A stretch of 64,000 nt of DNA, from the NCBI RefSeq assembly GCF_902652985.1, contig NC_047021.1, forward strand, positions 41,106,001 to 41,170,000, written 5' to 3'. Of the stretch, positions 440 through 63,652 are shown one piece after another. The translations under genes and the position numbers were made by a program. Below the pieces are notes generated by a model that saw nothing but the letters and a program-made list of their open reading frames with translations, was not told the origin of the DNA and did not search any database. Position 1 is the first letter of the stretch. Every line of letters starts with the position of its first letter. This stretch comes from Pecten maximus (taxonomy: Eukaryota).

Positions 440-5620
<5,181 letters not shown>

Positions 5621-29000: not shown

Positions 29001-32000
29001 GGAGCGACTTCAACAATCCGCGATGCTCAAAGAAGTCATCAAGGAACTTTTTGATGAGATCAAAGTTGATTTCAAGGCCAGCATGAAAAAATCCATGGGT
29101 AAATATGCACCTATTTTTAACATCTGCTAAATGTTCATCTATATTGGAAGATAATAAATATCTCATTTTGCTTACCATAATTCTTTCCTTTAAGATGTTT
29201 TCATAAAAAAATGGAAAAAAAGCAAATAACAAAAAAAAACCCAATAAAAACTCTAGTTTGAAACCCCCCAAAGAAGTGTGTTCATTCTTTTAACAACTTT
29301 TGTATGTCTCCATGTAGTTTCTTTAAAACCCCTAAAATATTATAGCCAATCTTTTTCTGATTGTCAGGTTGAAATTTTGTCCTGACTCTGATTTCTAGAT
29401 TAAAAAAAAAGTTTAATGAAACATCTATGTATGTGAGTTATGGCAAAAAGTCATGTCACTTACCAAACACAGGGTCAAGAACATACAGGAGGTCAAAGGT
29501 CAAATCATATTTATCCAATGAATTTTGCCTTACAATTGTTCAAATAAGCTCATAACGAGGTCCTATTGTCTATAAATATCTTTGCCTTGTCCTGAATTTG
29601 CAATTTTGTTCAAGAGATGAAAATAAAAACAGAGATATTTCTGATTTTACATAAGATCTCATGTTGATTTGAGTGGTCGAGAACCTGCGTCCTTCAGCAC
29701 TTTCTTTATCAAATATCTGTCTTATCAACAGTTCAACATGTACTGGTCAAGCCTGAGGTCAAGGGACTGGACAACGAGGAAGCTGGACCTCCACCACAGG
29801 AGCCAAGGTCAGTTACCAATCAAAAATAGAATTATAATTTCAATTTATTTATTCTCTCCAGACACTTGAGCCATGTGTAACATGAGGCCAATCAATAGTA
29901 TATATATATATATGATGGCATGACAGAGAAAATGACTACACGAGTTGTACATTGAATACATATCAAAATAATATTGATATTAGTAACATTCATACATGCT
30001 TGATACAAATCCGTTGCAATTGTGCTTAAAATTTCCCAAGTCTTTGGCAGCTTAAGAATCTTACCCCGAGGGTTGAGATTCCCCTGTCTCACTTCCATGG
30101 GGGTAAATGATTATTTTTCTCTTACCCTGTTTACCCTCTTATGTATCTAATATTAACGTTACATCAATGCAAGGAAATGTTGACGTGACGTGATTGAATT
30201 CTCGACGTGATGTCATTGTATTGCTGTGTGATGTCATAAAATTGTTGAGAACGTGCAAAGAGCATGTCTAGCTTGTCTCAACCCTTGGGTGAGACAAGAA
30301 AATTTCATACGGGTAAAATTGTTGACATCACTGTCCAGAGTAACAGAAAAATATAACTACATTTATCAATGTTTTCATTGACAGCGGACTAGATTTTTCT
30401 CGTCCTTGGCATGAAAATTTCATTCAGTCAAAAGAAGTGATTCTGGAAAATCTACATGTCCTGCATCCATCGATGCAGATCGTCCTAAACATGTGCCAGA
30501 CCACCCTCGGGAACCTCATCCTCGTGGACTGTTCCAGTATGAGGTAACATACAGATTTCTGAAACATTTTCACTTGATGATAATTTAAATCACCTCCCTT
30601 TAATTTGACTTACGTTCCTTTAAATGTTATTGATGATGGTATTTAGACATTTTATCTAATTCAGGAGTATTTCAGCTTTGCCGGACTGCAAGTTAAATAA
30701 CCTATCTAATTTAACAGAGAAAGTTTATCAAATGACACTTTATTTGATTTTTTTATTTTGTTCTTTCAAAAAGGGTATAAATGAATCAAGATAATATTAC
30801 CTCTATAAGTTGAACCTGAAAAAAAGGATTTTAGATTATTTTCTATCACAAAAAAGCTTTAGAATTTTTCTTTTGGGTTCACATCAAAATATTGACAGCT
30901 GAAAATTTACCGATATTCAATTAGTCCCTTAATATTTTCTCTTAGCTTGTCTTATAATTTAAATAAAATTAAAAAAGGCATTATTATTGTTTTAGTGTTA
31001 AAATGTTGTTGATCTCTTCACTTTCCAGAGCACGTGGAGCGATCGAGTTTGAATCAATGAAAAATAATATCCAACTTGACCTTGAGAAAATGGAGGACAA
31101 ACTAATGCACAGGTAATTCAGACCATGAGTAATAATATCATTGTTGATAGCTTAAGGCCAAGTAAACAAATATTTGTTTTACATGTAGCTAGACCAAAAA
31201 CTCTATATATTAATATTTTGTTTGTGCTGGTCGAAAATGCAAAAATACCCCCAAAAAAATTAAAAAAAAAAAAAAAAAAAAATAGCTATAAATCTTTTAA
31301 AGAGCTATTCAAAAAAGATAATTTTGTGACATACAAGGGTCTTTTTTTTGGCCTTTCATGAAACTAACCATGTTAACATTCAACAGCTGAAATATAATAT
31401 GTAAATCTTTTAAAAAGTTCTCCATATTGATTTTGTGATTTAATTTTCATAGCTGGTTTCCAACCATTATCAATGTGTTTGCGGACAAAGTAACATTCGT
31501 TCCTCCGAAGGCAGAAAAGACTGATTCCTTCTACAGTAGTGTGACGACTCTCATTTCCAACCAGGTACAAATTTTGGTTTAGTCTCTATATTATTCATTG
31601 TTTAAGCAGACATTTGGTTAATAATGCTGGAGAAAGGTCTGGTTTTCTGTGTAGATTCTTGATTATCTCAAGTTACAATTGTGGTACATTCACTAAAATA
31701 AGGTTTTGGCCTGTGGTCAGTCAATTTAATGATGTGTTCATTTGACTTCGCTCTGTTTTTCTGATACGAAAAAATATAACTCTTATAGAGTATTATTCCA
31801 CTAGGAGAAACTAGGTCATTGTGACCTATATTTCTCACTTCACTGACTTGGCTAAACTTTGAATATAGACATCTTTCCAGCAAAGCGGTACCCTCTGGAT
31901 ATGCTTAACTTTTTTCTTGTATTTTTTACTTCATTAATATATCTATATAATTCTTTTCAGCTGAAAAATCTACTGGCGCGTACCATTCATGCATTTGTCG

Positions 32001-35000
32001 ATCTGTTTGACCCAAATGACAAATCCCATCTCCCCCAGATGAAAATGGAACTGACTTTTGATGATCAAAAGATGCAGTTTTATCCTCCCAAAGAAGATTT
32101 GGAGGAAACTGTTTTGTTTGTTATCAAGCAAGTTTGTAAGACCATGCAGCAGGTCCCGACAGTGCAATCCTGGCTGGCAGGGGGCAGCACCGTCAACCAC
32201 ACAGATGTTACAATCGCCAAACACATTCTGGACGAAGCGACCAAGAAACTGCAGGAAGCTGTCAAGCTGAACTTTGAGGCACCACAGGCTCATCTGGAGT
32301 CTTTTAGTAAGTCAGCCATCACAGACTTTACCGCTTTATTGTCAAAGGTTGTCTATAATAGGAATGTTGGTGTGGTTGGGTGCTACATTTGCCTTTTACC
32401 TAAGTGCCAAGGGTTTGATTCCCTGATCGGATGGGGAAAGGTGTAGGGGTCACGTTTCCGAACACGTGGGTTTTCTATGGCTACCTCATTTTCTTTCCAT
32501 AATAAGACCCTTTGCATGCTTCCATTAGGCAAACAAATGCAATAAGACTTGTTGTAAGATAAAGTCTATAGTTTCTGAGATGTTACCTTGATGTTCTTTC
32601 ATGTCTTATTATCGTCGTATTGAAGAAAAAAAAAATTATTGTATGATGGAGTATCATTGCAAATAATTCTGATTAGTTGATGAACAAGCTCTTTCACAGC
32701 GTTTTTTTTTTTTTTTTTTTCATATGGAGAACTTTTTTTCTTTTTTTTTTATTAAGAGCTTTTTGTTTTGACCAGAAAATGGAAACATTCTGAAATATAG
32801 GTAGCAATTCTACACATGTAATTTAACCAAGTATGTTAGAAATATTTCCTGGAATGGCAGCATACGTCCTATTGTCATATACACTTGATTTAGATTCATA
32901 CATGTTGAGTGCTGAATTATTTGTGTTCCAGTTCAGCGATATGACTACATCGTCAATGGCGAGGCTCTCGCTGAAATCCACGAATATGTCAAACATGAAC
33001 ATACCTTTGCGGAGTACCAAGAGGTAAGTTTAAGTGAAACTGTTAAATATACATACAATACCATGTATCTTATTTGTGAAATGAAAATTAGGTGCTTATC
33101 ACAAAAAGTGTTTGCTGTAGGAAAAGCTAGCAGTTATACTTTATATTTTCATCAAAATTATGGCCAAACCATATTCCTCTGAAGTGCTGTATAAAGACAT
33201 TATAAATTATGCATGTCGGAAATATTTCCAGCAATATGCCATATTGACATGTTTCATAACTAGTATTCCAAGAGACTCAGAAACCTGATATTTGGCCAAT
33301 AATATCCTGGAACGACAAAATTTATTTAAATGAATAAAGCTAGCCTGCTGTGATATTTGAATAAAGTGGTAATCAGCTTAGTATCTGCATAAATGACCTA
33401 AATCAACTTCAAAGTTGCTCTAGAAGAAACAGGTGAGTGATACAGGCCCCTTGGGCCTCTTGTTTTCATAAAGTTTTATTATTTCTAAAACATTTTTTTT
33501 TTTCTGAACAGCAAATTGAAAAATACAGAGATGTGGCTAGAGAAATCATGGGTTTGCCAAGTATTGAGCACTTTGATATGATCCGTCTTGATTGCGAGGA
33601 TCTCAAGCGAGGTCTTGCAGAGGCTTCCCGGGGTTTGGCTGATGAACTTCTGAGGAAGGTGTCTGATGACCACAGACAGGAAAATATGAGGTCAGTCATT
33701 TTTAAATGTTGATAAAAGGCATCACTATGACAAATGTTTAGATTTCTGTTTAAGAACTGAGGATTAATTACTTTGACTCAGAAAATAAAACTTCTTGATA
33801 CTAATTACGTGGACTCCTTTTGTTCGCGAAAATTTTCTCCACGCATATTATTTTGATATCAATTTGCGTAATCTACCCCTACGTGTATAGTTTACATATT
33901 GAAATTGTGAAATTAACCACACACCCCCCCCCCCCCCCCCCCCCCTTGCGAAAATAATCACGTTTACAGTATATATATATATATATATATAAAATTTACA
34001 AAATTTTGTTTAACGAATTTTAATTTTGTTTGAAATAACTCCTGTCAATAGTTCCCCTTATTGTTGCTTTTATCTTCGGGATAAGACAGTTAGTCTATTG
34101 CATAGCTGTGAAAAGGCATTCGTATATCACAACCAGTAACTCCAATGTAAATAGGCATTCCTATGACAAAACCAGTAAACTTTTAAAACTGTGAAAGCTG
34201 TTTTTTCCAAAGCATAACATTGTTCACTCTTTTCAAGGATTGGGTATTACAAAATAATTTTCAATTGAAAATAAGTTTAGCTTCGAAAAATCAACCTTTG
34301 CAATATCAGGGTTGACAATGTTGTATGTGAACATTAATAAACTTAATTTTGGTTTCAGTATTTGCCAAGAGTTTACACAAATGAGAGATCGTGCTCTACA
34401 AGACCCCGAGACAACAGAGCAGCTCATGGACATGATGACCTTCATTGGTAATGCCAGAACTGTCGGAATGGTCGACCTCAACACACGTATCTCCGATTCT
34501 AAAAATAGACTGGCTTACCTAATTGATGTGTACATGTTTCCTCCAGAGGAAATCACCCTCAACTGTGAGGTGCTCACCTGGCCGAAACGTATCAACCCAG
34601 TTTTCGATGACCATGATGATGTAAGCATTAAAAAAAGAAACTCTCAATTTTTATCTGAAAAAAAAAAAATGAATTAAGGCATTGGTTACAATATAATGAA
34701 AAAAATATTGTATTTTTTCCATTAATTATGAATTTAACTTTCACCATGTATGACCTTGACCCTGTATTTACATGTGTTTGACCTTTGCCCTGTGATCAGC
34801 ATAATGTTTTGACATTGACCTACTTATTGTGACTGTGACCCAGTTTTCATTTATCTATTTCACAATAGAGACATTTATTTATTATTCCTGAACATTATGT
34901 GTTTGACATTGTCCCAGTTTTCATGATTTTGCTTGACCTTTAACCTCTGTATTCATGAATATATTTATCGATGACCTTTTACTTATTATGTATTTCCCCT

Positions 35001-38000
35001 TACAGCTTGTGGAGCAGTCAAAGATCAGCGGGGAGAAACAACTGCTGGAGAAACGAGAGAAGGTGATAATGGAATTGGAGAAATTACGTCAGCGCGTCGA
35101 CGAGTTTAACGACTACGGAGAGCTGGACATGATGCAGCAGTACGTCCAAGATGTCCGCCTCGTACAGAAACGTCTGGCAGACGTCACAGAACAGATCACC
35201 TGGATCAATAAGGTAAAAAAGAAGTTTGAATTAGAAACTTGTTTTACATAACTATCTGCTTCAGAAAATTTTACTCTCGATCGTTAAAGATGTTGCAACG
35301 CCAACAGCATGTACATTGCTTCACACAAAAATGGTTGAAATGGTCACCACAGTATAGAAAAATGTATCAATATACTAACACCATGAAATAGAAATTATAC
35401 TAGTGAACTTCTAATGATCGCTTAACTGAAAAGTTATCTTAAAAATATAGAGGTGGAGCAGTAAAATCAAAAAATTTTCACGATACAATTACTGCAAATG
35501 TACATATTTTAGTGGTAGTCTTATTTGAGTTTTTTTTTACTGAAGCATTTGGCTAAATTATAACCATGCTAATTATAGTTTATCTACATTGGTTTCAATG
35601 ACAAGAACTGTTATTCCACTAATTAATCATTCCGCTAATCTGTTTTAATTTGGTTTTGCACTGAAATTTTAGTCATCAAATTAAGTTCAATTTTAATACA
35701 GTAATTATTTATCCACTTAAATTTACAAGGTAAGATTTTAACCTCAAATTTTTTGGAGGATGGTAATAACCTGAAATATTCAACAGTTTATTTCTGTTTT
35801 TACAATCATTTGTATTAAATTACTCTTTGTCGGGAGGTCACATCTTTGACATTCACATCTTTGATAACATTTAACTACAATTTTTTACTGTAGCATTCGG
35901 ACACTAACCCATCCAATCATGATCTTATTTAGAGAACATTTTAGTTTTAGGTTATATCTATTTCCTCAAAATGGGATTCCTTACCATACGATTTTGTTTT
36001 TAAGGGGAGATAATTCTGTTTTGTAGGAGGAGCTTCTGTTCAAGTATCCCGTATCAACATACCCCGATGTTGAGGACATCACAAGTGCAGTGGATCCATT
36101 CCAGAGACTGTTCAATGTTGTACTACGTTGGCAGAAGGCTGAGAAAAAGTAGGCAAAATTTATCTTAGAAATATTCACACATTTTATAGTTTTTTCATGT
36201 CATGTTATTATAAGTAAATCTTATTAATTTTAAAGTTAAATCACTATAAATAATGAAAAACAGAATAAAAAACAGTTTGAATCAAACATTTCATGACGCT
36301 GAATGCTGGTTGTTTAACCTGAGGCTGTGGTCATAGATCTATAACAAACTGTAATTAACACTACCTTAAATAAATGTCATATTTTCAGCTTGTGAAAGGA
36401 TAACACTTGATAATCTGTACAATATCTTCATTTACAGTTCAATAAAATCATTTATCTGTCCACAGGTGGATGGACGGCTCCTTCCTTGACCTAGATTCCG
36501 AGGCGGTGGACGGAGAGGTTGATGAATACAACAGAGAATTGTACAAGATACAGAAAGTGTTTAACACTCGAATGAAGAAATTACAGATCGAGGTCGACGA
36601 CCGCAACAGGGACAGAAAGAAACGACGACGAGGTGCAGAGGAAAGCGGTGAGGAAATAAAACCGGAGGACCAAGATGAGGTTTTAAATCCCCCACAGGCC
36701 GTGAATGTGTGCACCAACGTCATGGACAGCATGAGGGATTTCAAGGTCAGAATTCATAGAGTGCGCAGCACGAGTGAAAAATATCAAAATATTAGCCACA
36801 CGAGTGAAATATATTTGGTATTACTGAAGACACTGTTAGATATTCTGTTTATTACATTTTTCATCAACGAAAACTCTACCCCGTATGCTAACTAGGACTA
36901 CAGCGATAATTTGTAAACAAAAAAAGTAGTTTCCCCTGTCCAGGTCCTGACATATATGTCGGGCTTTCTGATTGGTCAATTATTGTGGTATTTTCTAATC
37001 ATTAATTTGATTGGTCAAATCAGCAAAAAGTGATATTTTTCACTAGTGAAAAATATGATATTCTTCACTAGTGAAAAATATCACTTTTATAAAATGAATA
37101 ATTTTTGATATTTCACTGGTAAAAATGTAATAGTATACGATATTGATTTTCCTCGATCTTTATTGTTATTTTTTTTCTTATTTTTTTTTTTTCTTTTGTT
37201 ATTTCAAAAATATGATTGGTTAAGTTTATTCTAACCCAGTACATGTATACTTTTTCATCTGATGCAGGCCCATATATAAGTATATATATTTGTAATCTGT
37301 ACAACATTTGCAATTTTAATACAGCGCTGAAGGATAAGTAAACTTATTTTTTCTGTGTTTTTTAGAGCGTGTGAATACCATGGTAACAACTTCAAAATTG
37401 CTTCAAAATTGCAATGTGCGAAAAAACAAATACATATGCATGTATATCTTTTGTTCTCAGGATGTGATCCCGGTGATTGGTATTATGTGCAACAGAGGAA
37501 TGCGAGCTCGCCATTGGAAAGATATGTCAGATATTGCTGGATTTGATCTGACTCCGAACTCCGGAACAACGCTCCGGAAAGTTCTCAAGTTGGAGCTTGA
37601 AGCTCATATGGAAATGTTTGATGGAATCAGTGCTGCAGCCACAAAGGTGAGTAACAACTATACCCCTGTTTAATTTGTAAGTGAGTATACAGAGAAATCG
37701 CCGCCCATCTTCCATGGCAAAGACTCATATGAAAAATTCTCAAAATATGTAGTACCAATATATCCTCAAATAAGCCCCCTGTCTTCAAATAATCGTTAAG
37801 ATTATTGTTTAAAGAGCTTACTGATTCAAAATTGATCAATGATTCTGAAAAAATGAAGATTAGAGATTATTTGTGGGCAGTAGATTAATTGCAGATGGAT
37901 ACAGTTCATAATCATGTATTTTTATGTTGTCTACTTCTGATTGTCATCAGTCAAGCTCAAAAGGTCAAAGGTCACACTTGATTACATTAGAAATATTATC

Positions 38001-41000
38001 TTGAGTTTGAATATTTTTCACATAATCATGTTTTATTGAATCTAGGTGAGTGTGAAAATTAGACAGAAAAGCTCAAGTTTAAAAGGTCAAAGGTCACACT
38101 TGATTAAATTACAAATATCTTGAGTTTGAATATTTTTCACATAATCATGTTTTATTGAATCTAGGTGAGTGTGAAAATTAGACAGAAAAGCTAAATATTG
38201 ACAGACACTACAATTTTTGGTAAACTGTATAGATATTGAATGTTTTATAATCTTGATAGGAACACTCCTTGGAGAAAGCCATGTTGAAAATGATGGAGGA
38301 TTGGGATGCCGTAGACTTCAATCTCCTCGCTTATCGAGACACCGGTATCAGTATTCTGTCCTCGGTCGATGATATTCAGACCATTCTTGATGATCAGATC
38401 GTCAAGACACAAACTATGAGAGGCTCACCATTCATCAAACCATTTGAAAAGGAAATCAAGGTAAAATTATCTGTGTTACTGTGTAATTTAAATTAAGTTA
38501 GTGGACCTTGTATAATCTGGACACCTGTATAAACCAGACAACTAGGTCCCACTCTATACATTTCTATGTAACCCTGTACAATCTGGACACCTGTATAAAC
38601 CAGACATCTAGGTCCCACTATGTACAGTTCTATGTAACCCTGTATAATCTGGACACCTGTATAAACCAGACAACTAGGTCCCACTGTATACATTTCTATG
38701 TAACCCTGAATAATCAGGACACCTGTATAAACCAGACAACTAGGTCCCACTGTATACATTTCTATATAACCCTGTATAATCTGGACACCTGTATAAACCA
38801 GACAACTAGGTCCCACTGTATACATTTCTATGTAACCCTGTATAATCTGGACACCTGTATAAACCAGACAACTAGGTCCCACTGTATACATTTCTATGTA
38901 ACCCTGTATAATCTGGACACCTGTATAAACCAGACAACTAGGTCCTACTGTATACATTTCTATGTAACCCTGTATAATCGAACACCTGTATAAACCAGAC
39001 AACTAGGTCCCTCAGTGTACATTCCTGATGTAACCCTGTATAATCTGGACACCTGTATAAACCAGACAACTAGGTCCAACTGTATATGTTTCTATATAAA
39101 CCTGTATAATCAGGACACCTCTATAAACCAGACAACTAGGTCCCACTGTATACATTTCTATGTAACCCTGTATAATCGAACACCTGTATAAACCAGACAA
39201 CTAGGTCCCACTGTATACATTTCTATGTAATCCTGTATAATCTGGACACCTGTGTAAACCAGACAACTATGTCCCACTGTATACATTTCTATGTAACCCT
39301 GTATAATCTGGACACCTGTATAAACCAGACAACTAGGTCCCACTGTATACATTTCTATGTAACTCTGTATAATCTGGACACCTGTATAAACCAGACAACT
39401 AGGTCCCTCTGTATACATTTCTATGTAACCCTGTATAATCTGGACACCTGTATAAACCAGATCATCAACTAGGTCCCACTCACACCTTCTAAGACCTGTT
39501 TTTGTTACCTGTTATACATAAACTGGGAGGATAAATTTGGACAATGTATGCTTGAATTGGTTTATTGAATAAATGATATTGATTGGTTGGTTTCTAGGAA
39601 TGGGAGGAGCGACTGATCCGTATCCAGGATACTACGGATGAGTGGCTGAAGGTCCAGGCCCAGTGGCTTTACCTAGAGCCAATCTTCTCCTCGGAAGACA
39701 TCATGAGTCAGATGCCAGAGGAAGGACGTCTCTTCACAATTGTGGACAAGAACTGGAAAGACATAATGAAACATACTGTGAAGGACCCCAAGGTAGGGCG
39801 GCCATTTTATGCTGTGGATTACACTTACAATAGTAAATCATTTAAGAAATTTTTTGTAAGAAAAATTTTTCTAAGGGAAATGATTAAATCTATCTATCAT
39901 CTATTTGAATAGGTACTCATTGCTACAAACCTACCAGGACTTCTGGAAAAATTGGTTGACAGCAACGGTCTTCTTGACAAAATCAACAAAGGTCTGAATG
40001 CCTATCTTGAGAAAAAGCGTCTGTTCTTCCCGAGGTTCTTCTTCCTCTCCAACGACGAAATGTTGGAAATTTTGTCTGAGACCAAAGACCCTATGCGTGT
40101 ACAGCCTCATCTTAAAAAATGCTTTGAGGGAATCGCCAAGCTTCAGTTTGACAGCAAACTTGACATTCATGCCCTGTTTAGTAGTGAGGGTGAAAAAATT
40201 CAGCTTAGTCAGCCAATATCAACAAGTGATGCTAGAGGCGCTGTGGAAAAATGGCTTCTTCAAGTCGAGGAGATTATGCTGAAATCTATCAAGGCTGTTT
40301 GTGCTGAAGCCATGGAGGTAAGGTTCTCATGACTGTTATCAAATAATGATTTCTGGTATAAATACTCTTCATGCTAATTCAAAACTGAAGCCATTCCAAG
40401 CTGACACAGATATTTTCAACAGATTTGAGCTGCGCATGCCGATCATAAAAGTTTTGATTCAGTCAAACATGGATTACATATAAAATCAAAGAATTTAAAC
40501 AGAACTTGAGTCCCTTTTTGAGTTGACTCAAGCAAGTTCTGATAAATGTGTAGAAATCACCTTACATTATAAATCATGAGGAAATTACCAATTTTCATTC
40601 GAAATATACAATGACAATTGATGTAGTTAGTTTTCTCTTCAATGTTTTCAAAACTGAAACCACATATGATTGTTAATAGGAAAATGTCCGTACCCTAAGA
40701 TAAATCTGATTTATTCTTGCCAGGCTTATGCTACTGATGCCCGTGTGGACTGGGTGCGAATATGGCCAGGCCAGGTTGTCCTATGTGCCTCCCAGGCATA
40801 TTGGACCCGCGAGGTCCATGAGGCTATCCCTGGAGGTCCCGAGGGACTTAGGGACTACTGGAACACCCTGCAGAAACAACTCAATGATATTGTCATCCTG
40901 GTGAGAGGAAAACTTTCCAAACAGATTAGAACATCTCTGGGAGCTCTGGTCGTTATAGATGTCCACGCTCGTGATTCTGTACTGGAAATGGCAGATAAAG

Positions 41001-44000
41001 GTATGTAGCTAATCATACATTTGTTGTTATTTTAGATATCTGATAATCAACCTTAATCCTAAAATCATTTATTGAAAATGCAAATGTTTAAAATTTACTC
41101 TCTGTTGCAGACAATTTTGATTTTAGTATTTCAATTTCAATTTCAATACTTTTTAATTTTCATTTTATTATTTTATTATTAGCAAATCCCATTTAAAATA
41201 ATGTGCTGTGAAATTATACTGCCTTATATATACTGTATATGTACCTGGTAATTTTTGCTCCAGATTATCTTCATCCTTGAGCAACATAAAACATACTTGT
41301 CTTGTTTTAAATTCTCCCTAAATCGTTTTTCAGAAATGCCCTTTTCCCCCTTTGTAAAATTAAAAAATTCTGTTCAGAATTCTTGATTTAGAACACTTCG
41401 AATTGATCAAGTTCCCCAAATGTCTTTTCAATGCCTAACCAGCTGAGTTGTGAATATATGCCATCTTAAATTGTTGAAAAATGTTAGAATAAAAAAAAAA
41501 AGGTGAAAGGAAAATACACATAAATTAATTACAAACGTACAAATTTTCAGGTGTTGCATCCGAAAATGATTTTAACTGGCTAGCCCAGTTGCGTTATTAT
41601 TGGGAGGAAGAGAACATGCGCGTGAGGATCACTAATGCCACAGTCAAGTACGCCTACGAATACCTCGGTAATACTGGGCGTCTGGTTATCACTCCCCTCA
41701 CCGACAGATGTTACAGGACCCTAGTAGGGGCCTTCCACCTCAACCTCAACGGGGCTCCTGAAGGGCCAGCTGGAACTGGTAAAACAGAGACCACCAAAGA
41801 TCTTGCTAAGGCTCTCGCTGTGCAATGTGTTGTGTTCAACTGCTCTGACGGCCTCGACTACATTGCCATGGGCAAGGTTTGTGAAGTTTGACAAAAGTTG
41901 TCTGCCCTTTTGTTGCATGTTTAGATCAGTCAGTGAATTCAAAGCCTTACTATAAAGAACTTAACTCACAGTTGTTTATGATGTAAAGTTCCTTTATAAG
42001 GACACCTGTCCTTCATACACTTACTTCCTTTGCATTTATCCATTTTTACAACTAGGTAGACTAGAGCAATATTGTTACAAAATAATTATGATTGAGCTCT
42101 TACTGAATTCAGGGATAACTCTGGAGGGGGCCATGGGGCCATTTGCCCCATATTTTCCAAAATGGCCCACCAAAACTCACAAATTTCTTCAATTTTCTAT
42201 GATTTGGCCCATACGATTTCTGAAATCTTGTCAAAATGGCCCATGCCTGTTGGATCCAGGGTGAACCCTGCTGAATTTGCACTGTAGTTATCACTGTATT
42301 TACTGTAATTTCAGTTTTTCAAAGGATTGGCAGCTGCCGGAGCCTGGGCTTGCTTCGATGAGTTCAACCGAATTGACCTGGAAGTGTTGTCTGTCATTGC
42401 TCAACAGGTCTGTGACTTTCCTGAAGGAAAATGATAAAAATGAATGATAAATGAAAATAGATTGATAACAATATTCAATGAGAAGAAATATATGAATAAA
42501 CAAATAATATAAATAGTAATTAATAAATAAGTAATAAAAAGAAAGAAATGTTTAAGATAGATAACAAAAATTCAGGAATCAATAAATAGATAATAGAATA
42601 ATTTTGGTCTTTGAAAATTTTGAGAAATGAGTTGCAGAATTCAGCATATTTTCACATTCTCAACTTTTCAAAAACAAATTTGTCCATGTTTTTTAATTGC
42701 AGCAGTCTACTATTGACTATATGAAAACATTTTCTTATTACACTTCAGCAAATATGGCATATCCTTATGTAGAGTAAAGCAAATTTTTCTCAGATAAGTT
42801 CGAACCTTCATATCTCAAACAAATTTATTCCAGATCTTGTGCATCATTCGTGCCGTTCAGGCTCATGTGGATATGTTCATATTTGAGGGAACAGAGCTGA
42901 ACCTCAATCCAAACTGTTACGTGTGCATCACAATGAACCCAGGTTACGCTGGACGATCAGAACTTCCGGACAATCTGAAGGTTCTTTTCCGAACTGTGGC
43001 TATGATGGTACCGGACTATGCTATGATTGCCGAGATCTCTCTTTACTCGTTCGGATTCCAGAATGCCCGAAATTTGTCGGTGAAGATTGTGACTGTGTAC
43101 AGACTCTGTTCCGAGCAGCTTTCCTCACAATTTCACTACGATTACGGAATGAGAGCTGTCAAAGCCGTGTTATCTGCCGCCGGAAATTTGAAACTGCGAT
43201 TTCCAGAAGACAATGAAGACATTCTTGTAAGCGTTATGATGCCTTATGGATCGTAAATACTATATAGTTGTGAAATTTTACTGAGCTAGTCGGAACTTGT
43301 TTCAAGGGTATTAAATTTCGTGCAACCACACCTTGTTAACATTTTGCGGTAAACAGACGTTACTGTATATATAATGTAAATCACTTATATTCCGTGTGGG
43401 ATTTATATTCGTGTTAACACTTGAGGAGAGTCCATGGGTAGTAGAGTTTAATTGCAGTATTCTAGCACATATATATAAACACAAATTTAGCAAAAATATT
43501 AGAATAAAAATAAGAAAATTATTTAATTTCTTTCTTTAACTTTCAGCTGCTGCGCTCCATCATAGATGTCAATTTACCTAAATTCTTGGCCCATGACATT
43601 CCACTGTTCAACGGTATCATCTCTGATCTTTTCCCTGGCCTTTCCCTCCCGGAGGCGGACTATGATGTGTTTTTGGAAGCCATGAAGACAATCTGTGAGA
43701 AAAAGAATCTTCAATTTGTGGATTTCTTCAGAGAGAAAATTATCCAGACTTACGAAATGATGATCGTCCGACACGGGTAACTGAAAATATTACATCTCCC
43801 AGTCAGGAAACATTAATTTGTGTCAAGTCCCTGTGTAAAAATTTGTTTTCATTGTTGCTGTTATTGTTTTATGAATAAGAAGAAAACTGAAAATTGATTA
43901 GAATTCTATGACTGATTAATTTTCAGGAAACTCTCAAAGCAAAAAGAAAAAAATCTTTGTATACAGTATAATTTTTGAATTGTTGAATAAATGTAATTTT

Positions 44001-47000
44001 CAAATATCGAATTTCCTATTTTTAGTGTCGTTTAATGAACAGGTCCACAGAACTTTGATAATAACCTGAAGAAAACTCTAGTTGAACAATTTAATAATGG
44101 AAGTAGCTTGATTTCCATTAACTGCTGTGATTGTTTATGAAAATGTTCTTCCAGTTTCATGTTGGTGGGAGAGCCATTTGGGTGCAAGACCAAAGTCATA
44201 GAGACATTGAGCGAGGGGATGACGCTCTTGTTTGAACAAGGCGTAGAGGATTATAACAAGGTCTACTTCCGCGTCATCAACCCAAAGGCCATCACTATGG
44301 GTCAGCTGTACGGTCAGTTTGATCCCGTCTCCCATGAGTGGACCGATGGAATCATCGCCAACACCTTCCGAGAGTTCGCATCCACGGATACACCAGACAG
44401 GAAGTGGGTCATTTTTGACGGACCAATTGATGCTCTGTGGATCGAAAACATGAACACTGTATTGGATGACAACAAGAAACTGTGTCTCATGAGCGGTGAG
44501 ATCATCCAGATGTCCAATGAGATGAGTCTCATCTTTGAGACCATGGATCTCTCACAGGCCTCGGTAAGTCAGTGTGAATGAGATGAGACCATTAATCTGT
44601 CACAAGAACATCATGATTGAAATTCATCACTGATTTCCATGTATGAACAACTTTTCACATACATTCTTACCAAACCAAACAAAAAAAATTTGAAAAATAT
44701 AAATCTAATGCTTGTTCACAGATTTGACCAAACCAAACAAAAAAAAAAATTTTTAAATATAAATCTAATGCTTGTTCACAGATTCGACATTGATATTGAT
44801 TTTGTATTTTTTTCTGGGGGATTTTTTAGGCTGATAATTAGCCTCATTTCCATTTGAAATTATTTCATATTTAAACTGCATTCCCTAAATTTGCTGTTTC
44901 TGGATTAATTTCCTTCCCAATTCACAAACTTTCTTCCCAAAATGAGGCAAAAGGCCCCATCAGAGGATCAGTGAAAAAAAGCTCTGCATTTCAAATAATG
45001 TATATCAGATATGTTGGTAGATCTGATTAAACATTATTATAAAACTGCATTTTGTCTAGTAGTCAGTCACTGTGTGTAGATGTGATTGTATAAAGACGTA
45101 TTTTATCTCGTAGCCGGCCACCGTGAGTAGGTGCGGTATGGTGTACCTAGAGCCGTCAACCCTCGGCTGGAGACCAATCATGCGCTCCTGGATCCATACA
45201 TTTGAGGGAGCTATGCAGCTAGAGGGGGCAGAAGTGATTGAGGCGATGTTTGAGTGGCTTGTAGATCCTTGCCTTGAATTTGTCCGTAAACACACAAAAG
45301 TGAGTTGCTTTAATGTGATATTGATTAGTGTTATAGTTATCATAGAAATTGTTTCTTTTTTTTTCGTTTTTAATTTTTAGTTTTAAAGCAGCTAAAAGGT
45401 CACTACTTTTGTGTTTAACAATAATGTTCGTTGACAGTACTCTCAGTACTTTGATTTTGTCCATGGACTTATGGGCTCAGTGTAATTGTCACTTCATTAC
45501 TTGGTTGGAAACTTTATTGAAGAATTGATGCAGAGCAAAATATTTTGTTGTAAACAGGCAGCTGGTTGCATTTGTCTCACTGGAGATATTTCATGATATT
45601 TTTCAAGTTAGAATAAAAAAGAAATATGTATTATATCATCATGGAATCTGTAATGGACTTTATGATACAGATGTCAGTGCAAAAAAAGGGGGGAAAAAGA
45701 ACATGTATAAGATGTGAGAAGCTGTGTATGGCCCCTGTATCTCATTTCTAATTGTCTTTTTAGGAATACATCGGGTCTAAGGAGTCCAACCAAGTGCGTT
45801 CTCTCATGTATCTGATTGATATGTTGATGTCTGAAGCTCTTAGTCAGAAGGATGTGGACGAAAACCGCCACCTGAAAACATGGATCATCGTAAGTAACTC
45901 AGAGGGACCACTGCAGAAAAAAAAGATAACAATTCATTAAATGATCTTGTTTCAAGAATTTTCTTGTACATTTACATATTTTGTCAAATCAACAGAATGA
46001 TTTTTCAGTTGGACAATAACATTTATTTTTCATTTTTTTCTTGCATGTAAAAGCATAATTTGTTCATGGATTTCTGCTCAGTAAATTCAATTCGTAACAT
46101 ACATTTCCAAAAATAGAAACAATTCAATTCTTATTAAAAAAATATCTAAATCCCATGCACCCATCAAACCTTGCTTGTTTGTAAATCAAATTGATCGGAA
46201 AATTAGAAAATTGTATTTGTCAATTTCAGTCGTCTGTGCTGTTTGCTATCCCATGGTCCATTGCTGCATGTGTAGATGTTGACGGAAGGGAGAAGTTTGA
46301 TAACTTCTACAAGGACATTGTAGCGGGCAAGTTGGACAACCACCCAATGCCCAAGGCTGTCGGCAAACTGGATGTACCACTGCCGTCTGAACAAAGTGTC
46401 TACAATGTCTTCTTTGAGGTAAGTTTGTCTTAATAGAAAATTATTTTCATACATAAAATTCAAATTAGTTTCTCTTTATGATAAATTTTTGGATTTTATT
46501 TGAAACATTTTTAGCTTATATTTATTTATCTATTTGAAAAATAAATCTATATGATAAATTTTTGGATTTTATTTGAAACTTTTTTAGCTTATATTTATTT
46601 ATCTATTTGAAAAATAAATAGTATGTTGTTAGTGTCTCATCTTCAATTTTTTTTTTTTTTTTTTTTTTTCTCAAGCAGTCTGGGTATATGAATAATATAC
46701 TGAATCATATTTTTTCGTATTTATGGAGCACAAAATGCTTTGATTCAACCTTGTTCATGTTTTATGAGAAGTCTCATGTTAAAGATTTTGAGAGAGTTTA
46801 TATATGAAGCAGTACTGAATCACAACATTCAATAGGCTGTTGTTTACATATAGATAGACACTGGAATATTTTAAAGTATTTTACTACATTGAGCTTCCTA
46901 TACTTACGTCAGACGGCAGTGTTTTTCGAGATGTTAAAATGTCAATTGCTTTTCACATAAAATATGTCTTAAATACTGTAAACGTTGAAATTTACGCAAG

Positions 47001-62000: not shown

Positions 62001-63089
62001 TTGAATTAAAATTTTACACCCACAATTTTAATGCAACTGTCATCATACCTTGTTTCAGTAATAAGTCCAAGATACTGGAACGTCGCCTACGTTATTTGAA
62101 GGATCACTTCCAGTTTCAATTATACGACAATATAACGCGCTCAATATTTGCAATGCACAAGCTCGTGTTTGCGTTCCTACTTTGTGCAAATCTACAGTTG
62201 TGAGTATTCACATGACAATGTGGAGTATAGATATAGTATCGTCTAGTCTTGTATAGTCTGTAGAGACTGTCCGTACTCGTAACCAAGAACTCAACGCTCT
62301 TACTGCATACTCGCTACACTCGTGTTTTCACTCTCAAACACGAGTACCGTACTGTTATGCATACTCACTATCATAAATTTGTGTTATATACTCACTTTCC
62401 TCTATACTCACCTATACCCCTCGATACTTGCTATGCCCCTGTATACTCACCTATACACATCTATACTCACTTTGCCCCCTGTATACTACTAAAAAATTTA
62501 GTGCTTTTTGTACAAGAATTTTGAACCCTACGCTGCTTATTGATGTGAATCCTTACCAATATAAAACATCGTTGAAATGTCTTTTCCAAAATTTTATATA
62601 TTTTTTTTTTATTATTTATTTAATTTTATTTGAAATTAGTATTGACTGGTATCAAATTTCAGATTGGGTTCAAAATTACGTACAATTACAGTATTTACAA
62701 ATATGTCTATGGGGTGCGACATTTTATTATTTTCAAACACATCCCTCTGAAGACATATTTTTAAGTGCTGTATAATTAGTCAGAGACATGCATGCTTTTG
62801 TCTCTGGTATTTCTCCTGTGTTGTCATATATATTAAGGAGTCTCCACCCATATGCCTGCGAAGACTTCAGACAAGGGGGATAAATCTTGTCTGTCACCAC
62901 GAGCTTGTATATAGCTAGCTATATATGTTTATTCTGCCTGTTTTTCAGCAACAAATCCAAGATTCTGGAGCGTCGTTTGCGATACCTTTCTGACTACTTT
63001 ACATACAGTCTCTACTGTAATGTTTGTCGATCCCTCTTTGAGAAAGACAAACTGCTCTTTTCTTTCATTCTCTGTTCAAACATGTTGTT
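23061..63089 (+). CDS. DNAH12: Axonemal inner-arm dynein heavy chain, DNAH12-like; tail, linker, AAA1-4, stalk/MTBD and AAA5; continues beyond the window
   Basis: Exons: 23061-23311, 23794-23884, 24469-24483, 25373-25399, 28909-29098, 29732-29807, 30385-30543, 31029-31112, 31453-31564, 31961-32306, 32932-33023, 33512-33690, 34359-34620, 35006-35212, 36027-36148, 36466-36745, 37461-37646, 38260-38460, 39598-39792, 39913-40317, 40724-41000, 41551-41876, 42315-42407, 42834-43226, 43547-43776, 44155-44563, 45114-45299, 45764-45889, 46230-46418, 47248-47393, 47723-47861, 48028-48194, 48648-48840, 49287-49492, 49997-50071, 50516-50606, 51123-51301, 51867-52059, 52503-52664, 53254-53448, 54180-54476, 55157-55414, 55939-56160, 56813-57343, 57768-57913, 58290-58504, 58972-59164, 59469-59661, 60051-60223, then 62059-62199 or 62949-63089. 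P-loops [33 protein letters not shown]; also [10 protein letters not shown] and [12 protein letters not shown]. Tail motifs ([38 protein letters not shown]) recall DNAH12 rather than DNAH7/3; that subtype call is from memory. Confidence 0.88.
23518..23680. mobile_element. MITE with short terminal inverted repeats (related copy at 55444-55633)
   Basis: agtttcatcaacat ... atgttgataaaact ends; internal ttt(t/c)ccataggaaagca is shared with the 55444-55633 copy. Confidence 0.6.
24469..24483 (+). CDS. DNAH12: 15-nt microexon of the dynein N-terminus (LDPRA), phase 0-0
   Basis: ttctgcag|CTTGACCCGAGAGCG|gttagt with a ctaat branch-like motif upstream; frame-preserving between phase-0 neighbours. Confidence 0.55.
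25373..25399 (+). CDS. DNAH12: 27-nt microexon of the dynein N-terminus (MMSKERRIR), phase 0-0
   Basis: ctccttcaacag|ATGATGAGCAAAGAAAGGAGGATTCGG|gtacgt; purine-rich and bridges PDFPQE to [11 protein letters not shown] in frame. Confidence 0.7.
25405..25770 (+). repeat. Degenerate ~35-45-bp tandem repeat rich in CTAAC, directly downstream of the 27-nt microexon
   Basis: taccttatatggtc x6 (25408-25610); CTAAC at 25430, 25471, 25546, 25590, 25631, 25669 and 25705. Confidence 0.75.
26187..26480 (+). mobile_element. tRNA-derived CORE-type SINE
   Basis: GGGGCCGCG...CTCAG...TTAGA head, TGTGACCTTGGGCAAG CORE motif, 3' tail aaatgaccatgactgctcatagggcgataaacccc. Confidence 0.75.
27877..28604. repeat. 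(TATAGTTACTGGTA)n minisatellite, 14-16-bp unit
   Basis: About 50 near-perfect units in the dynein intron. Confidence 0.95.
30058..30350. mobile_element. Putative non-autonomous DNA element with internal inverted repeats
   Basis: gggttgaga/tctcaaccc, tgtctcac/gtgagaca and ttttctcttac/gtaacagaaaa inverted pairs. Confidence 0.5.
32360..32565 (+). mobile_element. Degenerate V-type SINE copy
   Basis: gggtttgattccctgatcggatg...ggggtcac...gtgggttttct...aataagacccttt aligns by eye with 21007-21240. Confidence 0.6.
33801..33971. mobile_element. 5'-truncated copy of the TACTGTAAAC-TIR MITE
   Basis: ggactccttttgttc...gatatcaatttgcgtaatct...cacgtttacagta. Confidence 0.7.
36752..37132. mobile_element. 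Putative non-autonomous element immediately after a dynein donor site
   Basis: cacgagtgaaa repeats, inverted pairs tgaaaaatatcaaaa/tttttgatatttca and tattacattttt/aaaaatgtaata, palindromic ttttcactagtgaaaa. Confidence 0.5.
37953..38192. repeat. Direct duplication of about 120 bp
   Basis: aaaaggtcaaaggtcacacttgatta...gtgaaaattagacagaaaagct occurs twice. Confidence 0.85.
38505..39480. repeat. 66-bp minisatellite (about 14-15 copies) filling most of a dynein intron
   Basis: tataatctggacacctgtataaaccagacaactaggtcccactgtatacatttctatgtaaccctg; accounts for the repetitive ORFs at 38493-39472. Confidence 0.95.
42110..42270. mobile_element. MITE with CAGGG...CCCTG termini (hAT-like)
   Basis: cagggataactctgga ... 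tccagggtgaaccctg imperfect terminal inverted repeats; internal tggccca motifs. Confidence 0.55.
46477..46620. repeat. Direct duplication of about 73 bp
   Basis: tatgataaatttttggattttatttgaaac...ctatttgaaaaataaat occurs twice. Confidence 0.8.
46974..47178. mobile_element. MITE with TACTGTAAACG/CGTTTACAGTA ends (TA-flanked, Tc1/mariner-like)
   Basis: Terminal inverted repeats; interior shared with 57362-57520, 59686-59899 and 33801-33971. Confidence 0.8.
48290..48606. repeat. ~38-45-bp tandem repeat (about 8 copies) with a TCACTCCAGTGA quasi-palindrome
   Basis: ttcactccagtgaatatttttt(g)taattaaaaaaaaatct units ending about 40 nt before a dynein acceptor. Confidence 0.85.
51419..51645 (+). mobile_element. 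tRNA-derived V-type SINE with (AAAC)n tail
   Basis: gccgcagtggccgagtggttaaggtg A-box, gagttcgaaa B-box, gtttttctctaggtactccagctttcctcca core, tail aaatgaccctggctgttaataggacgttaa(aaac)n. Confidence 0.8.
52152..52382. mobile_element. CORE-type SINE copy with an internal inversion
   Basis: Forward match to 26271-26310, then the reverse complement of the 26312-26476 segment, then a forward (AAAC)n tail. Confidence 0.7.
53476..53991. mobile_element. MITE-like element whose right terminal motif is tandemly amplified (unit about 42 bp)
   Basis: Left aagtaagcccc; right ggggcttatttgaggataaatatggta repeated about 8 times. A reverse copy of the motif lies at 37753-37790. Confidence 0.65.
55444..55633. 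mobile_element. MITE related to 23518-23680
   Basis: ggccccagtttca ... gagaaactcg ends; tttcccataggaaagca core. Confidence 0.55.
57362..57520. mobile_element. TACTGTAAAC-TIR MITE copy
   Basis: tactgtaaac ... gtttacagta. Confidence 0.8.
59338..59420 (-). mobile_element. tRNA-like SINE head fragment
   Basis: Minus strand reads tagcttagtggt ... agttcgaggccc (A/B boxes) with no intact cloverleaf. Confidence 0.5.
59686..59899. mobile_element. TACTGTAAAC-TIR MITE copy
   Basis: tactgtaaacgtgg ... ccacgtttacaata. Confidence 0.8.
62059..62199 (+). CDS. DNAH12: Dynein alternative exon A (divergent paralogue, candidate mutually exclusive exon)
   Basis: tgtttcag|...|gtgagt, 141 nt, phase 2-2, open: [47 protein letters not shown]. 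Not in the supplied ORF track. Confidence 0.85.
62949..63089 (+). CDS. DNAH12: Dynein alternative exon B (canonical sequence, candidate mutually exclusive exon)
   Basis: tttttcag|...|gtaagt, 141 nt, phase 2-2: [47 protein letters not shown]. Confidence 0.9.
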
Positions 63090-63652
63090 GTAAGTATGAG
63101 ATTGAGTGAAATGTTGGAATGGCTTTGATGTGATTACTTTTGCTGTGTTTTATTTACATTTTGTTAATATTTCAATTCATTAACTCTTTCGTTCTGGTTT
63201 TTGTGTGTTTTTTATTGAGTGTTGCCAAAAGACCTTTTTGACTATTTAATTATAAGAAAGTAAGAAAGAAAGCAAATCATAAAGAAAACGTTCATCTTGT
63301 AATTTTTTAATACAAATCTTATTTATTTATTTATTTGTTTTATTTACTTTTTTTCTTCTTTAAATGATTCTGTCTTGGATTTAGTCAATTAAACTGTAAT
63401 TTTCTTCTATTTTAATTTTTTTTCTAAAGGTATTTTGGCAACATTTTGTTTGACGTGATTTCTTACAATGGTTATTGTTAAAGCCAATTTAATATTTTGG
63501 TATTTGTAATATATTTGTTTGGTTATTTCTAAATATAGTTTTCATATAATCTTAAAATTGATTTTTTTTTTTTTTTTTTTTAAATATGAGCAAACAAGCT
63601 GGTAGGGTTTAACAACAAACTTTCAAATGAAAATCTCCGCAGTTCTTAGTAT

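What the first reader, a model, noticed from the sequence alone, without database searches (positions are those of the whole stretch)
62059..63089. Tandem paralogous 141-nt exons in an inner-arm dynein (DNAH12-like) motor domain: candidate mutually exclusive splicing that gives two motor variants
Seen: two exons of identical length (141 nt) and phase (2-2), each with good AG/GT sites, follow exon 60051-60223. They are 29/47 aa identical. Their first 14 residues ([14 protein letters not shown]) are identical, yet 10 of those 14 codons differ synonymously, which points to an old duplication with purifying selection on both copies rather than decay. Exon B has the usual axonemal dynein motif [18 protein letters not shown]. 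Exon A has [18 protein letters not shown], losing the E-K-D charges. Established: this segment lies just after the AAA5 buttress/strut and before AAA6, a region that couples nucleotide state to the stalk, and mutually exclusive exons tune invertebrate myosin motors. Inference: one gene encodes two mechanochemically distinct dyneins, e.g. for sperm flagella versus gill or larval cilia. I do not know of this being described for axonemal dyneins.
Basis: partly seen in the sequence, partly recalled or inferred. Interest (0 to 1): 0.88.

Follow-up and report, generated by a model that had tools for sequence, protein, structure and literature searches.

The report
Mutually exclusive exons in dynein gene
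A bivalve inner-arm dynein (DNAH12-like) gene carries two interchangeable copies of one 47-residue motor-domain exon; the pair is real, predates the mollusc/brachiopod split, and is already modelled as alternative isoforms in related molluscs, but what the swap does is untested.

Summary
Exon A (62059-62199) and exon B (62949-63089) are both 141 nt, AG/GT-flanked and phase 2-2. They are 29/47 aa identical, with saturated synonymous sites. Both align to the same residues (3179-3224) of solved DNAH12 chains, so only one can fill that structural slot.

The mutually-exclusive reading is supported indirectly. RefSeq holds equal-length isoform pairs that differ only in this exon (A-type versus B-type) in Magallana gigas, Ostrea edulis, Mya arenaria, Dreissena polymorpha (three-way), Liolophura sinensis and Biomphalaria glabrata.

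A-type exons also sit upstream of B in Lottia (unannotated), Lingula and an unidentified spiralian. Capitella, Ptychodera and Orbicella loci have one copy. A-type exons form one clade (95/87), and dN/dS between orthologous A exons is 0.01-0.09.

B is the near-invariant ancestral metazoan sequence and A is the derived one. Its fixed changes cluster around a helix-turn-helix in the segment between the AAA5 and AAA6 domains.

Not shown: transcripts from this species, tissue specificity, any mechanochemical difference, and how exclusivity is enforced. NMD, U2/U12 incompatibility and steric hindrance are excluded for A/B.

I found no paper describing it, but mutually exclusive exons in a dynein motor domain are published (Schistosoma DHC1). 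Verdict: a new, ancient member of a known kind, of moderate interest.

The parts
23121..63090 (+). Part of a DNAH12-like axonemal (inner-arm type) dynein heavy chain gene. About 46 exon hits cover residues 12-3280 of the 4015-aa Magallana gigas orthologue. The gene runs off the window end.
   Evidence: tblastn of P0393 and P0414 against the window gives 60-97% identity per exon. The best solved-structure hits are DNAH12 chains. The window is closest to oyster orthologues, 83% aa.
60051..60223 (+). Constitutive upstream exon (173 nt, phase 0-2). It encodes ...[22 protein letters not shown] and the first two bases of the Ser codon that either A or B completes.
   Evidence: It is 86-93% identical to the orthologous exon in other loci.
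60224..62058 (+). Intron upstream of exon A (1835 nt). Contains TGCATG at 61827 and an A20 run at 61937-61956.
62059..62199 (+). Exon A: the derived 'A-type' alternative exon, 141 nt, phase 2-2, donor gtgagt. It carries the A-type diagnostic residues D23, T26, A31, H33 and V36.
   Evidence: Orthologous A exons occur in 18 sampled sequences and form one clade at 95/87 support. dN/dS is 0.01-0.09.
62200..62948 (+). Intron between A and B (749 nt). Contains degenerate ~39-nt direct repeats at 62399-62496, a T10 run at 62601-62610 and TGCATG at 62790.
   Evidence: It does not align with the Magallana gigas intron.
62949..63089 (+). Exon B: the ancestral 'B-type' exon, 141 nt, phase 2-2, donor gtaagt. 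It is 96% identical to oyster B and near-identical to the single exon of cnidarians, placozoans, hemichordates and vertebrates.

Best explanation
Exons A and B are a tandem-duplicated pair of mutually exclusive exons in a bivalve DNAH12-like inner-arm dynein heavy chain gene. Each mRNA takes one of them. This yields two full-length heavy chains that differ only in a 47-residue segment lying after the AAA5 (Pfam AAA_9) match and before AAA6. That segment is predicted, at modest confidence, to be helix-turn-helix.

B is the ancestral, almost invariant metazoan sequence. A is a derived version that arose before molluscs and brachiopods diverged and has been kept under strong purifying selection since.

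Shown: the anatomy, the homology, the age, the constraint, and the existence of A-only and B-only transcript models in relatives.

Inferred: that this species splices the same way, and that the swap changes motor behaviour in a cell-type-specific way. One possible route is packing at the base of the buttress or against AAA6.

How exclusivity is enforced is unknown. It is not frame/NMD, not U2/U12 incompatibility and not a too-short intron, so trans-acting regulators are the likeliest remaining mechanism. UGCAUG/Rbfox-type elements are a weak lead.
For: - Anatomy and phase.
- A and B are homologous (E 2e-21).
- Both align to the same residues, 3179-3224, of solved DNAH12 chains 9fqr_PW and 8j07_g1. 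It is the only gene segment that hits the window twice.
- RefSeq isoform pairs of identical length differ only in this exon:
  - M. gigas XP_065937691.1 (B) / XP_065937692.1 (A)
  - O. edulis X2 (B) / X1 (A)
  - Mya arenaria X1 / X2 and X3 / X4
  - Dreissena X1 (B) / X5 (B') / X4 (A)
  - Liolophura X1 (B) / X3 (A)
  - Biomphalaria X2 (B) / X1 (A)
- A lies upstream of B, with intact AG...GTRAGT sites and the same phase, in every genome with the pair. Length is 141 nt everywhere except Lottia A, which is 138 nt.
- All 17 A-type exons form one clade, including the Lingula copy and the unidentified-spiralian copy (95/87).
- dN/dS of A orthologues: 0.009/0.685 (oyster pair), 0.028/0.33 (L001 vs L003), 0.083/1.57 (window vs L001).
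- Domain position: AAA_9 2950-3170, exon 3233-3280, Dynein_heavy 3415-3529 in P0395.
- The AF2 model built from alignment A3 gives two helices across the exon.
- The fixed A/B differences cluster at positions 23-36.
Against: - No transcript data for the species of the window could be examined.
- The RefSeq XP records are computed models. That Gnomon builds alternative variants from transcript/RNA-seq support is my own knowledge; I did not inspect that support.
- No spliced A-containing fragment appeared among short Logan/ENA/JGI protein fragments, while several spliced B-containing fragments did. B is probably the major form.
- Several gene models include A and B in tandem: Saccostrea echinata XP_061175884.1, Lingula XP_013387188.1, and GenBank models of Sinanodonta, Pomacea, Plakobranchus, Elysia and Biomphalaria.
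- Double inclusion and double skipping both stay in frame (141 = 3 x 47), so nothing in the sequence forbids them.
- The downstream exon is outside the window.
Confidence: 0.85

Rival explanations
1. A and B are both included in the same mRNA, constitutively or often. The protein would then carry a tandem repeat of the 47-residue segment.
For: Models with A immediately followed by B exist: RefSeq Saccostrea echinata isoform X3 (4062 aa = 4015 + 47), two Lingula anatina XP records, and GenBank models for Sinanodonta, Pomacea, Plakobranchus, Elysia, Biomphalaria glabrata and B. pfeifferi. Co-inclusion keeps the reading frame.
Against: Six species have A-only and B-only isoforms of identical length. 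Both exons align to the same 46 residues of solved DNAH12 chains, which hold a single copy. Every non-lophotrochozoan protein sampled has one copy. Most tandem models are GenBank submitter models or 'hypothetical/partial' records, where an in-frame exon with good splice sites is likely to be chained in. That last point is my inference.
Confidence: 0.07
2. In this species exon A is an unused relic that is never or only negligibly spliced in. B is then effectively constitutive.
For: Only B-type sequences were seen in spliced short fragments. Window exon A carries a few lineage-specific changes (K32M, Y19F) relative to other A-types.
Against: The reading frame, length, phase, polypyrimidine/AG acceptor and gtgagt donor are all intact. 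It is 87% aa identical to the A exon of a heterodont bivalve while synonymous sites are near saturation (dN 0.083, dS 1.57). A decayed exon would not retain this.
Confidence: 0.06
3. The pair is an assembly artefact, such as collapsed or duplicated haplotypes or a misjoin.
For: None found.
Against: The copies are only 57% identical at nucleotide level. The same A-then-B arrangement recurs in independent assemblies of many species.
Confidence: 0.01

Closest known systems
RefSeq isoform pairs of DNAH12 orthologues in molluscs (e.g. Magallana gigas XP_065937691.1 / XP_065937692.1; Ostrea edulis X1/X2; Mya arenaria X1/X2; Dreissena polymorpha X1/X4/X5; Liolophura sinensis X1/X3; Biomphalaria glabrata X1/X2)
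   Same: Orthologous gene, same exon, same A-type and B-type sequences, same length and phase. The isoforms differ only in this exon. The M. gigas locus has the same layout: A at 28988, B at 29841, 712-nt intron.
   Different: They are computed annotation records, not a described finding. No paper in the searchable library discusses them. The window is a different bivalve (83% aa identity), and its own annotation could not be seen.
Mutually exclusive exon in the cytoplasmic dynein heavy chain DHC1 of Schistosoma mansoni (Pillmann et al. 2011, PMC3228551), plus the remark on motor-domain splice forms in Kollmar 2016, PMC5100056
   Same: A tandem pair of homologous, equal-length exons with split codons at both ends, inside a dynein heavy chain. 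They were judged mutually exclusive because they encode the same structural part.
   Different: [quoted passage not shown] This one is an axonemal DNAH12-type gene with the exon in the AAA5-AAA6 region, and here conservation across phyla is documented.
Mutually exclusive exon clusters of invertebrate muscle myosin heavy chain (Drosophila Mhc; Daphnia magna Mhc is cited in PMC3228551)
   Same: One motor gene makes several motor variants by swapping homologous exons that encode the same structural element. This is an analogy in principle.
   Different: It is a different motor superfamily. For myosin, functional differences between isoforms have been shown experimentally (my own knowledge); for this dynein none has.
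Docking-site/selector RNA competition clusters (Dscam, 14-3-3 zeta type)
   Same: Tandem homologous exons from which one is chosen.
   Different: No conserved complementary intronic elements were found. The only long complement in the window is an A20/T20 pair, which is not conserved in other species.

Membership tests
Mutually exclusive exon cluster derived from tandem exon duplication (criteria of PMC3228551) | Neighbouring internal exons of one gene, on the same strand | tested here: met
   A is 62059-62199 and B is 62949-63089, both on the + strand and separated by one 749-nt intron.
Mutually exclusive exon cluster derived from tandem exon duplication (criteria of PMC3228551) | Same or nearly the same length, same reading frame and splice phase, canonical splice sites on each copy | tested here: met
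   Both are 141 nt, phase 2-2, AG/GT-flanked.
Mutually exclusive exon cluster derived from tandem exon duplication (criteria of PMC3228551) | [quoted passage not shown] | tested here: met
   BLASTP E 2e-21. Both align to residues 3179-3224 of solved DNAH12 chains.
Mutually exclusive exon cluster derived from tandem exon duplication (criteria of PMC3228551) | Mature transcripts contain exactly one of the copies | not testable with these tools
   No reads or transcripts of this species are accessible. Indirect support comes from RefSeq A-only and B-only isoforms of equal length in six related species. The caveat is that a few models contain both.
DNAH12-type single-headed inner-arm dynein heavy chain | Dynein heavy chain domain order (DHC_N2, AAA1-4, stalk, AAA5, AAA6, Dynein_C), with closest similarity to DNAH12 rather than other classes | tested here: met
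   Window exons cover residues 12-3280 of M. gigas 'dynein axonemal heavy chain 12', whose Pfam architecture is complete. Exon B scores 75 bits against DNAH12 chains versus 54 against DNAH7. The C-terminal fifth of the gene lies outside the window. That it is 'inner-arm, single-headed' follows from the DNAH12 assignment (established knowledge) and was not tested.
NMD-enforced mutual exclusion | Inclusion of both exons, or of neither, shifts the reading frame | tested here: not met
   141 nt = 47 codons, so both alternatives stay in frame.
U2/U12 spliceosome-incompatibility mutual exclusion | One flanking intron has U12-type splice sites | tested here: not met
   The donors are gtgagt (A) and gtaagt (B). 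The acceptors are pyrimidine-rich ...cag in all species.
Steric-hindrance mutual exclusion | The intron between the alternative exons is too short to be spliced | tested here: not met
   The A-B intron is 749 nt in the window and 571-1590 nt elsewhere. Only the B'-B intron of heterodont-like loci is short, at 68-70 nt, which is borderline.
Docking-site/selector competing RNA structure | Conserved intronic element complementary to an element next to each alternative exon | tested here: inconclusive
   The only candidates are low-complexity complements: A20 at 61937-61956 against T10 at 62601-62610 and T20 at 63562-81. These are absent from the other loci. No covariation analysis was possible because introns do not align between the distant species.
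Rbfox-type (UGCAUG) regulated alternative exon | Conserved (U)GCAUG elements in introns flanking the regulated exon | tested here: inconclusive
   In two related heterodont-like loci, GCATG occurs 9 times against about 2 expected, and it sits in conserved intronic islands, including 10-11 nt downstream of exon A and 26 nt upstream of B'. In the window there are only two TGCATG (61827, 62790) against 1.6 expected, so there is no enrichment.

The most novel reading that the evidence does not exclude
An exon switch dating to before the mollusc/brachiopod split gives lophotrochozoans two versions of one inner-arm dynein motor. In heterodont bivalves and an unidentified spiralian there are three. 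The versions differ in a helix-turn-helix of the AAA5 small domain next to the buttress. On this reading they are deployed in different ciliated cell types (for example sperm flagella versus gill or larval cilia) and differ in mechanochemistry. That would make it the first documented case of axonemal dynein motor tuning by mutually exclusive splicing.
Probability: 0.35. Interest if true: 0.7.

Novelty: new member of a known kind. Interest (0 to 1): 0.45.

Why it matters
Axonemal dynein diversity is usually explained by gene duplication, with one heavy-chain gene per position in the 96-nm repeat. A deeply conserved exon switch inside the motor of one inner-arm dynein would add splicing as a second source of motor diversity.

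It also points to a specific 47-residue element after the AAA5 buttress as a place where evolution has kept two alternative solutions under constraint since before molluscs and brachiopods diverged. That makes a concrete, testable structure-function question.

It has a practical side too. Gene models that chain both exons, or omit A as in Lottia, are probably mis-annotated.

Tried and rejected
- **Pfam on the three single exons:** no hits because they are too short. I used a full-length orthologue instead.
- **Spliced A-containing fragments:** searches with P0021 and with the A region of P0002 found only genomic read-through ORFs for A and spliced fragments for B.
- **Third exon copy in the window:** none found. 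The weak hit at 63791-63925 was rejected after translation.
- **Conserved intronic elements between the window and M. gigas:** the introns do not align. The near-equal distance of TGCATG upstream of B (159 vs 161 nt) is therefore not supported as homology.
- **A20/T20 complement flanking the cluster:** not conserved, so treated as chance low complexity.
- **Identity of the organism behind L005-L007** (GCA_013332975.1, GCA_029980185.1): a literature search for the accessions found nothing. Protein identity is 66-73% to every lophotrochozoan sampled, so it is left as an 'unidentified spiralian'.
- **Failed look-ups:** two contig look-ups failed because the product is not on record (Owenia P0368, Liolophura P0414).
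- **Structure:** the single-sequence AF2 model of P0160 was poor (pLDDT 46.7). The alignment-based model reached 65.8. I judged that too low for a fold search and used it for secondary structure only.
Full report
**1. What is in the sequence**

The window holds no N. On the + strand, exon 60051-60223 ends ...CACGACAG|gtacac and translates to ...[22 protein letters not shown], plus two bases of a split codon.

Two further exons follow:
- Exon A is 62059-62199, with acceptor ...ttgtttcag and donor gtgagt.
- Exon B is 62949-63089, with acceptor ...gtttttcag and donor gtaagt.

Both are 141 nt. Each completes the split Ser codon and ends with TT of another split codon, so both are phase 2-2. The introns are 1835 nt (upstream of A) and 749 nt (between A and B).

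The two peptides are 28/45 identical by BLASTP (E 2e-21), or 29/47 counting the Ser. The first 14 residues are identical, and exactly 10 of those 14 codons differ synonymously. Over the whole exon, nucleotide identity is 57%, pS is about 1 and pN is 0.25.

**2. Which gene, and where in the protein**

Both exons find 'Dynein axonemal heavy chain 12' chains (9fqr_PW, 8j07_g1) as best solved-structure hits. Both align to the same residues, 3179-3224 (B 75 bits, A 55 bits).

tblastn of the Magallana gigas DNAH12 isoform X1 (P0393) finds about 46 exon hits from 23121 to 63090. These cover residues 12-3280 at 60-97% identity. Residues 3233-3280 are the only part that hits twice. Over the motor region the window is closest to oysters (83% aa), then to a unionid and Mya, so it comes from a bivalve that is not among the named species.

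In the M. gigas A-isoform (P0395), Pfam places AAA_9 (AAA5) at 2950-3170 and Dynein_heavy (AAA6 P-loop) at 3415-3529. The exon sits at 3233-3280. By established dynein architecture (my own knowledge), that inter-domain stretch is the AAA5 small domain following the buttress/strut.

An AlphaFold2 model of a spliced 214-aa B-type fragment (P0160) was built with a 42-sequence alignment (A3). Mean pLDDT is 65.8, and about 55-70 across the exon. It gives helices at 119-141 and 144-161, with the exon spanning 113-159. That is a helix-turn-helix at modest confidence.

**3. Is exon A used? Evidence from relatives**

An exhaustive profile search with exon A returned short ORFs that read from intron into an A-type exon in other genomes (P0001-P0008, 69-87% identity).

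A region search with a full-length dynein and a cluster look-up then gave named RefSeq proteins. Typing them at this site and comparing equal-length isoforms shows pairs that differ only in this exon:

| Species | B-type isoform | A-type isoform | Length (aa) |
|---|---|---|---|
| M. gigas | XP_065937691.1 (X1) | XP_065937692.1 (X2) | 4015 |
| Ostrea edulis | X2 | X1 | 4016 |
| Mya arenaria | X1, X3 | X2, X4 | 4010 (X1/X2); 4002 (X3/X4, which also differ at one N-terminal residue) |
| Dreissena polymorpha | X1 (B), X5 (B') | X4 | 4005 (X1), 4003 (X4, X5) |
| Liolophura sinensis (chiton) | X1 | X3 | 3980 |
| Biomphalaria glabrata | X2 | X1 | 3997 |

Dreissena thus has a third variant, B'. These are computed models. 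That Gnomon only creates alternative variants with transcript support is my own knowledge, and I did not check it. I therefore count this as indirect transcript evidence.

On the other side, several models chain A and B in tandem: Saccostrea echinata X3, two Lingula XP records, and GenBank models of Sinanodonta, Pomacea, Plakobranchus, Elysia and Biomphalaria. Among short spliced fragments only B-type was seen.

**4. Genomic conservation**

| Locus | Organism | Copies at this site |
|---|---|---|
| L011 | M. gigas | A, B |
| L013 | Lottia gigantea | A, B (A is 138 nt and missing from the JGI model P0348) |
| L009 | Lingula anatina | A-like, B |
| L001-L003 | two heterodont-like bivalve assemblies | A, B', B |
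| L005-L007 | unidentified spiralian | A, C, B |
| L010 | Capitella | one copy (different intron position) |
| L008 | Ptychodera | one copy |
| L012 | Orbicella | one copy |

L012 contains 6117 N. I left these alone, so a hidden copy there cannot be excluded.

Every copy has a pyrimidine-rich AG acceptor and a GTRAGT donor in the same phase. In the molluscan loci and the spiralian locus, A donors are gtgagt and B donors are gtaagt; in Lottia and Lingula, the A-type donor is gtaagt.

A maximum-likelihood tree of 52 exon peptides (46 columns, so resolution is limited) puts all 17 A-type exons on one side of a branch with 95/87 support. This includes the Lingula copy and the spiralian copy. The duplication therefore probably predates the mollusc/brachiopod split. 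That this split is Cambrian or older is my own knowledge. The tree cannot rule out convergence.

Orthologous A exons are under strong purifying selection:

| Comparison | dN | dS |
|---|---|---|
| Oyster-like L004 vs M. gigas | 0.009 | 0.685 |
| L001 vs L003 | 0.028 | 0.33 |
| Window vs L001 | 0.083 | 1.57 |

**5. What differs between A and B**

B-type is nearly invariant from Trichoplax and cnidarians to vertebrates, so B is ancestral and A is derived.

Across 18 A-type and 32 B-type exons, the fixed or near-fixed differences are:

| Exon position | B-type | A-type | A-type exons with the change |
|---|---|---|---|
| 23 | C | D | 16 of 18 |
| 26 | C | S/T/A | 14 of 18 |
| 31 | E | A | 18 of 18 |
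| 33 | D | H | 17 of 18 |
| 36 | L | V | 18 of 18 |

There are also shifts at positions 14, 18, 20, 43 and 45. In the model, the fixed differences surround the inter-helix turn.

K32 is kept in 16 of 18 A-types, and the M in this window is idiosyncratic. H at position 33 ('FEKHKL') is common in other dynein classes.

**6. How exclusivity might be enforced**

Double inclusion and double skipping both keep the frame (141 = 3 x 47), so NMD cannot police it. Both exons have U2-type sites. The A-B intron (749 nt) is far too long for steric hindrance. Only the 68-70-nt B'-B intron in heterodont-like loci is short.

The window has an A20 run 100 nt upstream of A (61937-61956), which is complementary to T10 in the A-B intron and to T20 downstream of B (63562-63581). 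None of this is conserved.

Between two related heterodont-like loci, introns are about 40-50% identical except for islands that contain UGCAUG. One island is immediately downstream of A and another is 26 nt upstream of B'. GCATG occurs 9 times against about 2 expected. The window has only two TGCATG (61827, 62790), which is not enriched. Its introns do not align with those of M. gigas.

The mechanism is therefore open. Tissue-specific trans-acting factors are the best guess.

**7. Literature**

Pillmann et al. 2011 (PMC3228551) show a mutually exclusive exon in Schistosoma mansoni cytoplasmic DHC1. [quoted passage not shown]

Searches combining axonemal dynein or DNAH12 with mutually exclusive or alternative exons, molluscs or AAA5 found nothing relevant. 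The library covers open-access papers and bioRxiv only.

**8. Verdict**

The splicing interpretation is well supported by comparative evidence and by existing RefSeq isoform models in relatives. The functional interpretation (two mechanochemically distinct dyneins, sperm versus cilia) is untested.

It is a new and unusually ancient member of a known kind, already implicit in public annotation. I score interest as moderate, at 0.45.

**9. Housekeeping**

Exons were searched one at a time by reference.
- In the scripts, the two 46-residue exon translations were written as literals.
- No human contig was fetched.
- The hit list contained one human protein and some primate proteins. They were present in the bulk typing step but were not selected, aligned or looked up further.
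- The solved-structure hits (8j07, 9fqr) were used only as table entries.

Noticed in passing
window 13292-13729 (- strand): An ORF with a strong Pfam IQUB-like domain match (E 1.4e-26). It is probably an exon of an IQUB-like gene upstream of the dynein gene and on the opposite strand. IQUB is a cilia/flagella-associated protein (my own knowledge).
   Followed up: partly
window 61937-61956, 62601-62610, 63562-63581: An A20 run about 100 nt upstream of exon A is perfectly complementary to a T20 run about 470 nt downstream of exon B (23-nt perfect inverted repeat), and partly to T10 in the A-B intron. Only 8 homopolymer runs of 15 nt or more exist in the whole 64-kb window, and two of them bracket the exon pair. 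This is not conserved in the other loci.
   Followed up: yes
window 62399-62496: Three degenerate direct repeats of about 39 nt (CTATACTCAC-rich) lie in the A-B intron. Their significance is unknown.
   Followed up: no
L001 10219-10300, 10805-10975, 11360-11400, 11740-11810 (and the matching parts of L003): Intronic islands are conserved between two heterodont-like bivalve assemblies. Each contains UGCAUG (the Rbfox-type motif), including 10-11 nt downstream of exon A and 26 nt upstream of exon B'. GCATG occurs 9 times against about 2 expected.
   Followed up: partly
L001 11809-12160; L003 11734-12083; L005 6277-7616: The cluster has three members in some lineages. Heterodont-like bivalves have A, B' and B, with a 68-70-nt and highly conserved B'-B intron; B' is used in Dreissena isoform X5. 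An unidentified spiralian with a compact gene (GCA_013332975.1, GCA_029980185.1 and an ENA metagenome) has A, C and B.
   Followed up: partly
L013 32430-32567 (Lottia gigantea KB200576.1): An intact A-type exon (138 nt, one codon shorter, gtaagt donor) lies upstream of B but is absent from the JGI gene model LOTGIDRAFT_225521. This looks like a missed alternative exon.
   Followed up: yes
P0390 (C. virginica X7, 3289 aa) and P0394 (O. edulis X5, 3286 aa): These RefSeq isoforms end a few residues after exon B by reading into the following intron, giving heavy chains without AAA6 and the C-terminal domain. In the window the same read-through would stop after one codon (TTG TAA).
   Followed up: no
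P0418/P0419 vs P0322 (Ptychodera flava); P0399 (C. gigas X6); Mya X1 vs X3: There is small alternative-splicing variation directly after this exon in other species. Ptychodera has an 8-residue difference at the start of the next exon, and one C. gigas isoform has a 2-residue (NG) insertion. Mya isoforms differ by 8 aa elsewhere.
   Followed up: no
P0436 / P0359 (Biomphalaria glabrata), P0358 (Littorina): Gastropods appear to have a second DNAH12-like paralogue (72% identity to the window, versus 77-79% for the main orthologue). Its protein models have a single B-type exon.
   Followed up: no
Search of protein representatives output: Almost no full-length dyneins appeared among the hits (only P0071), although full-length DNAH12 proteins score about 55 bits with exon A in the PDB search. 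The 50%-identity representative library seems to under-report long proteins for very short queries. A blank there should not be over-read.
   Followed up: no
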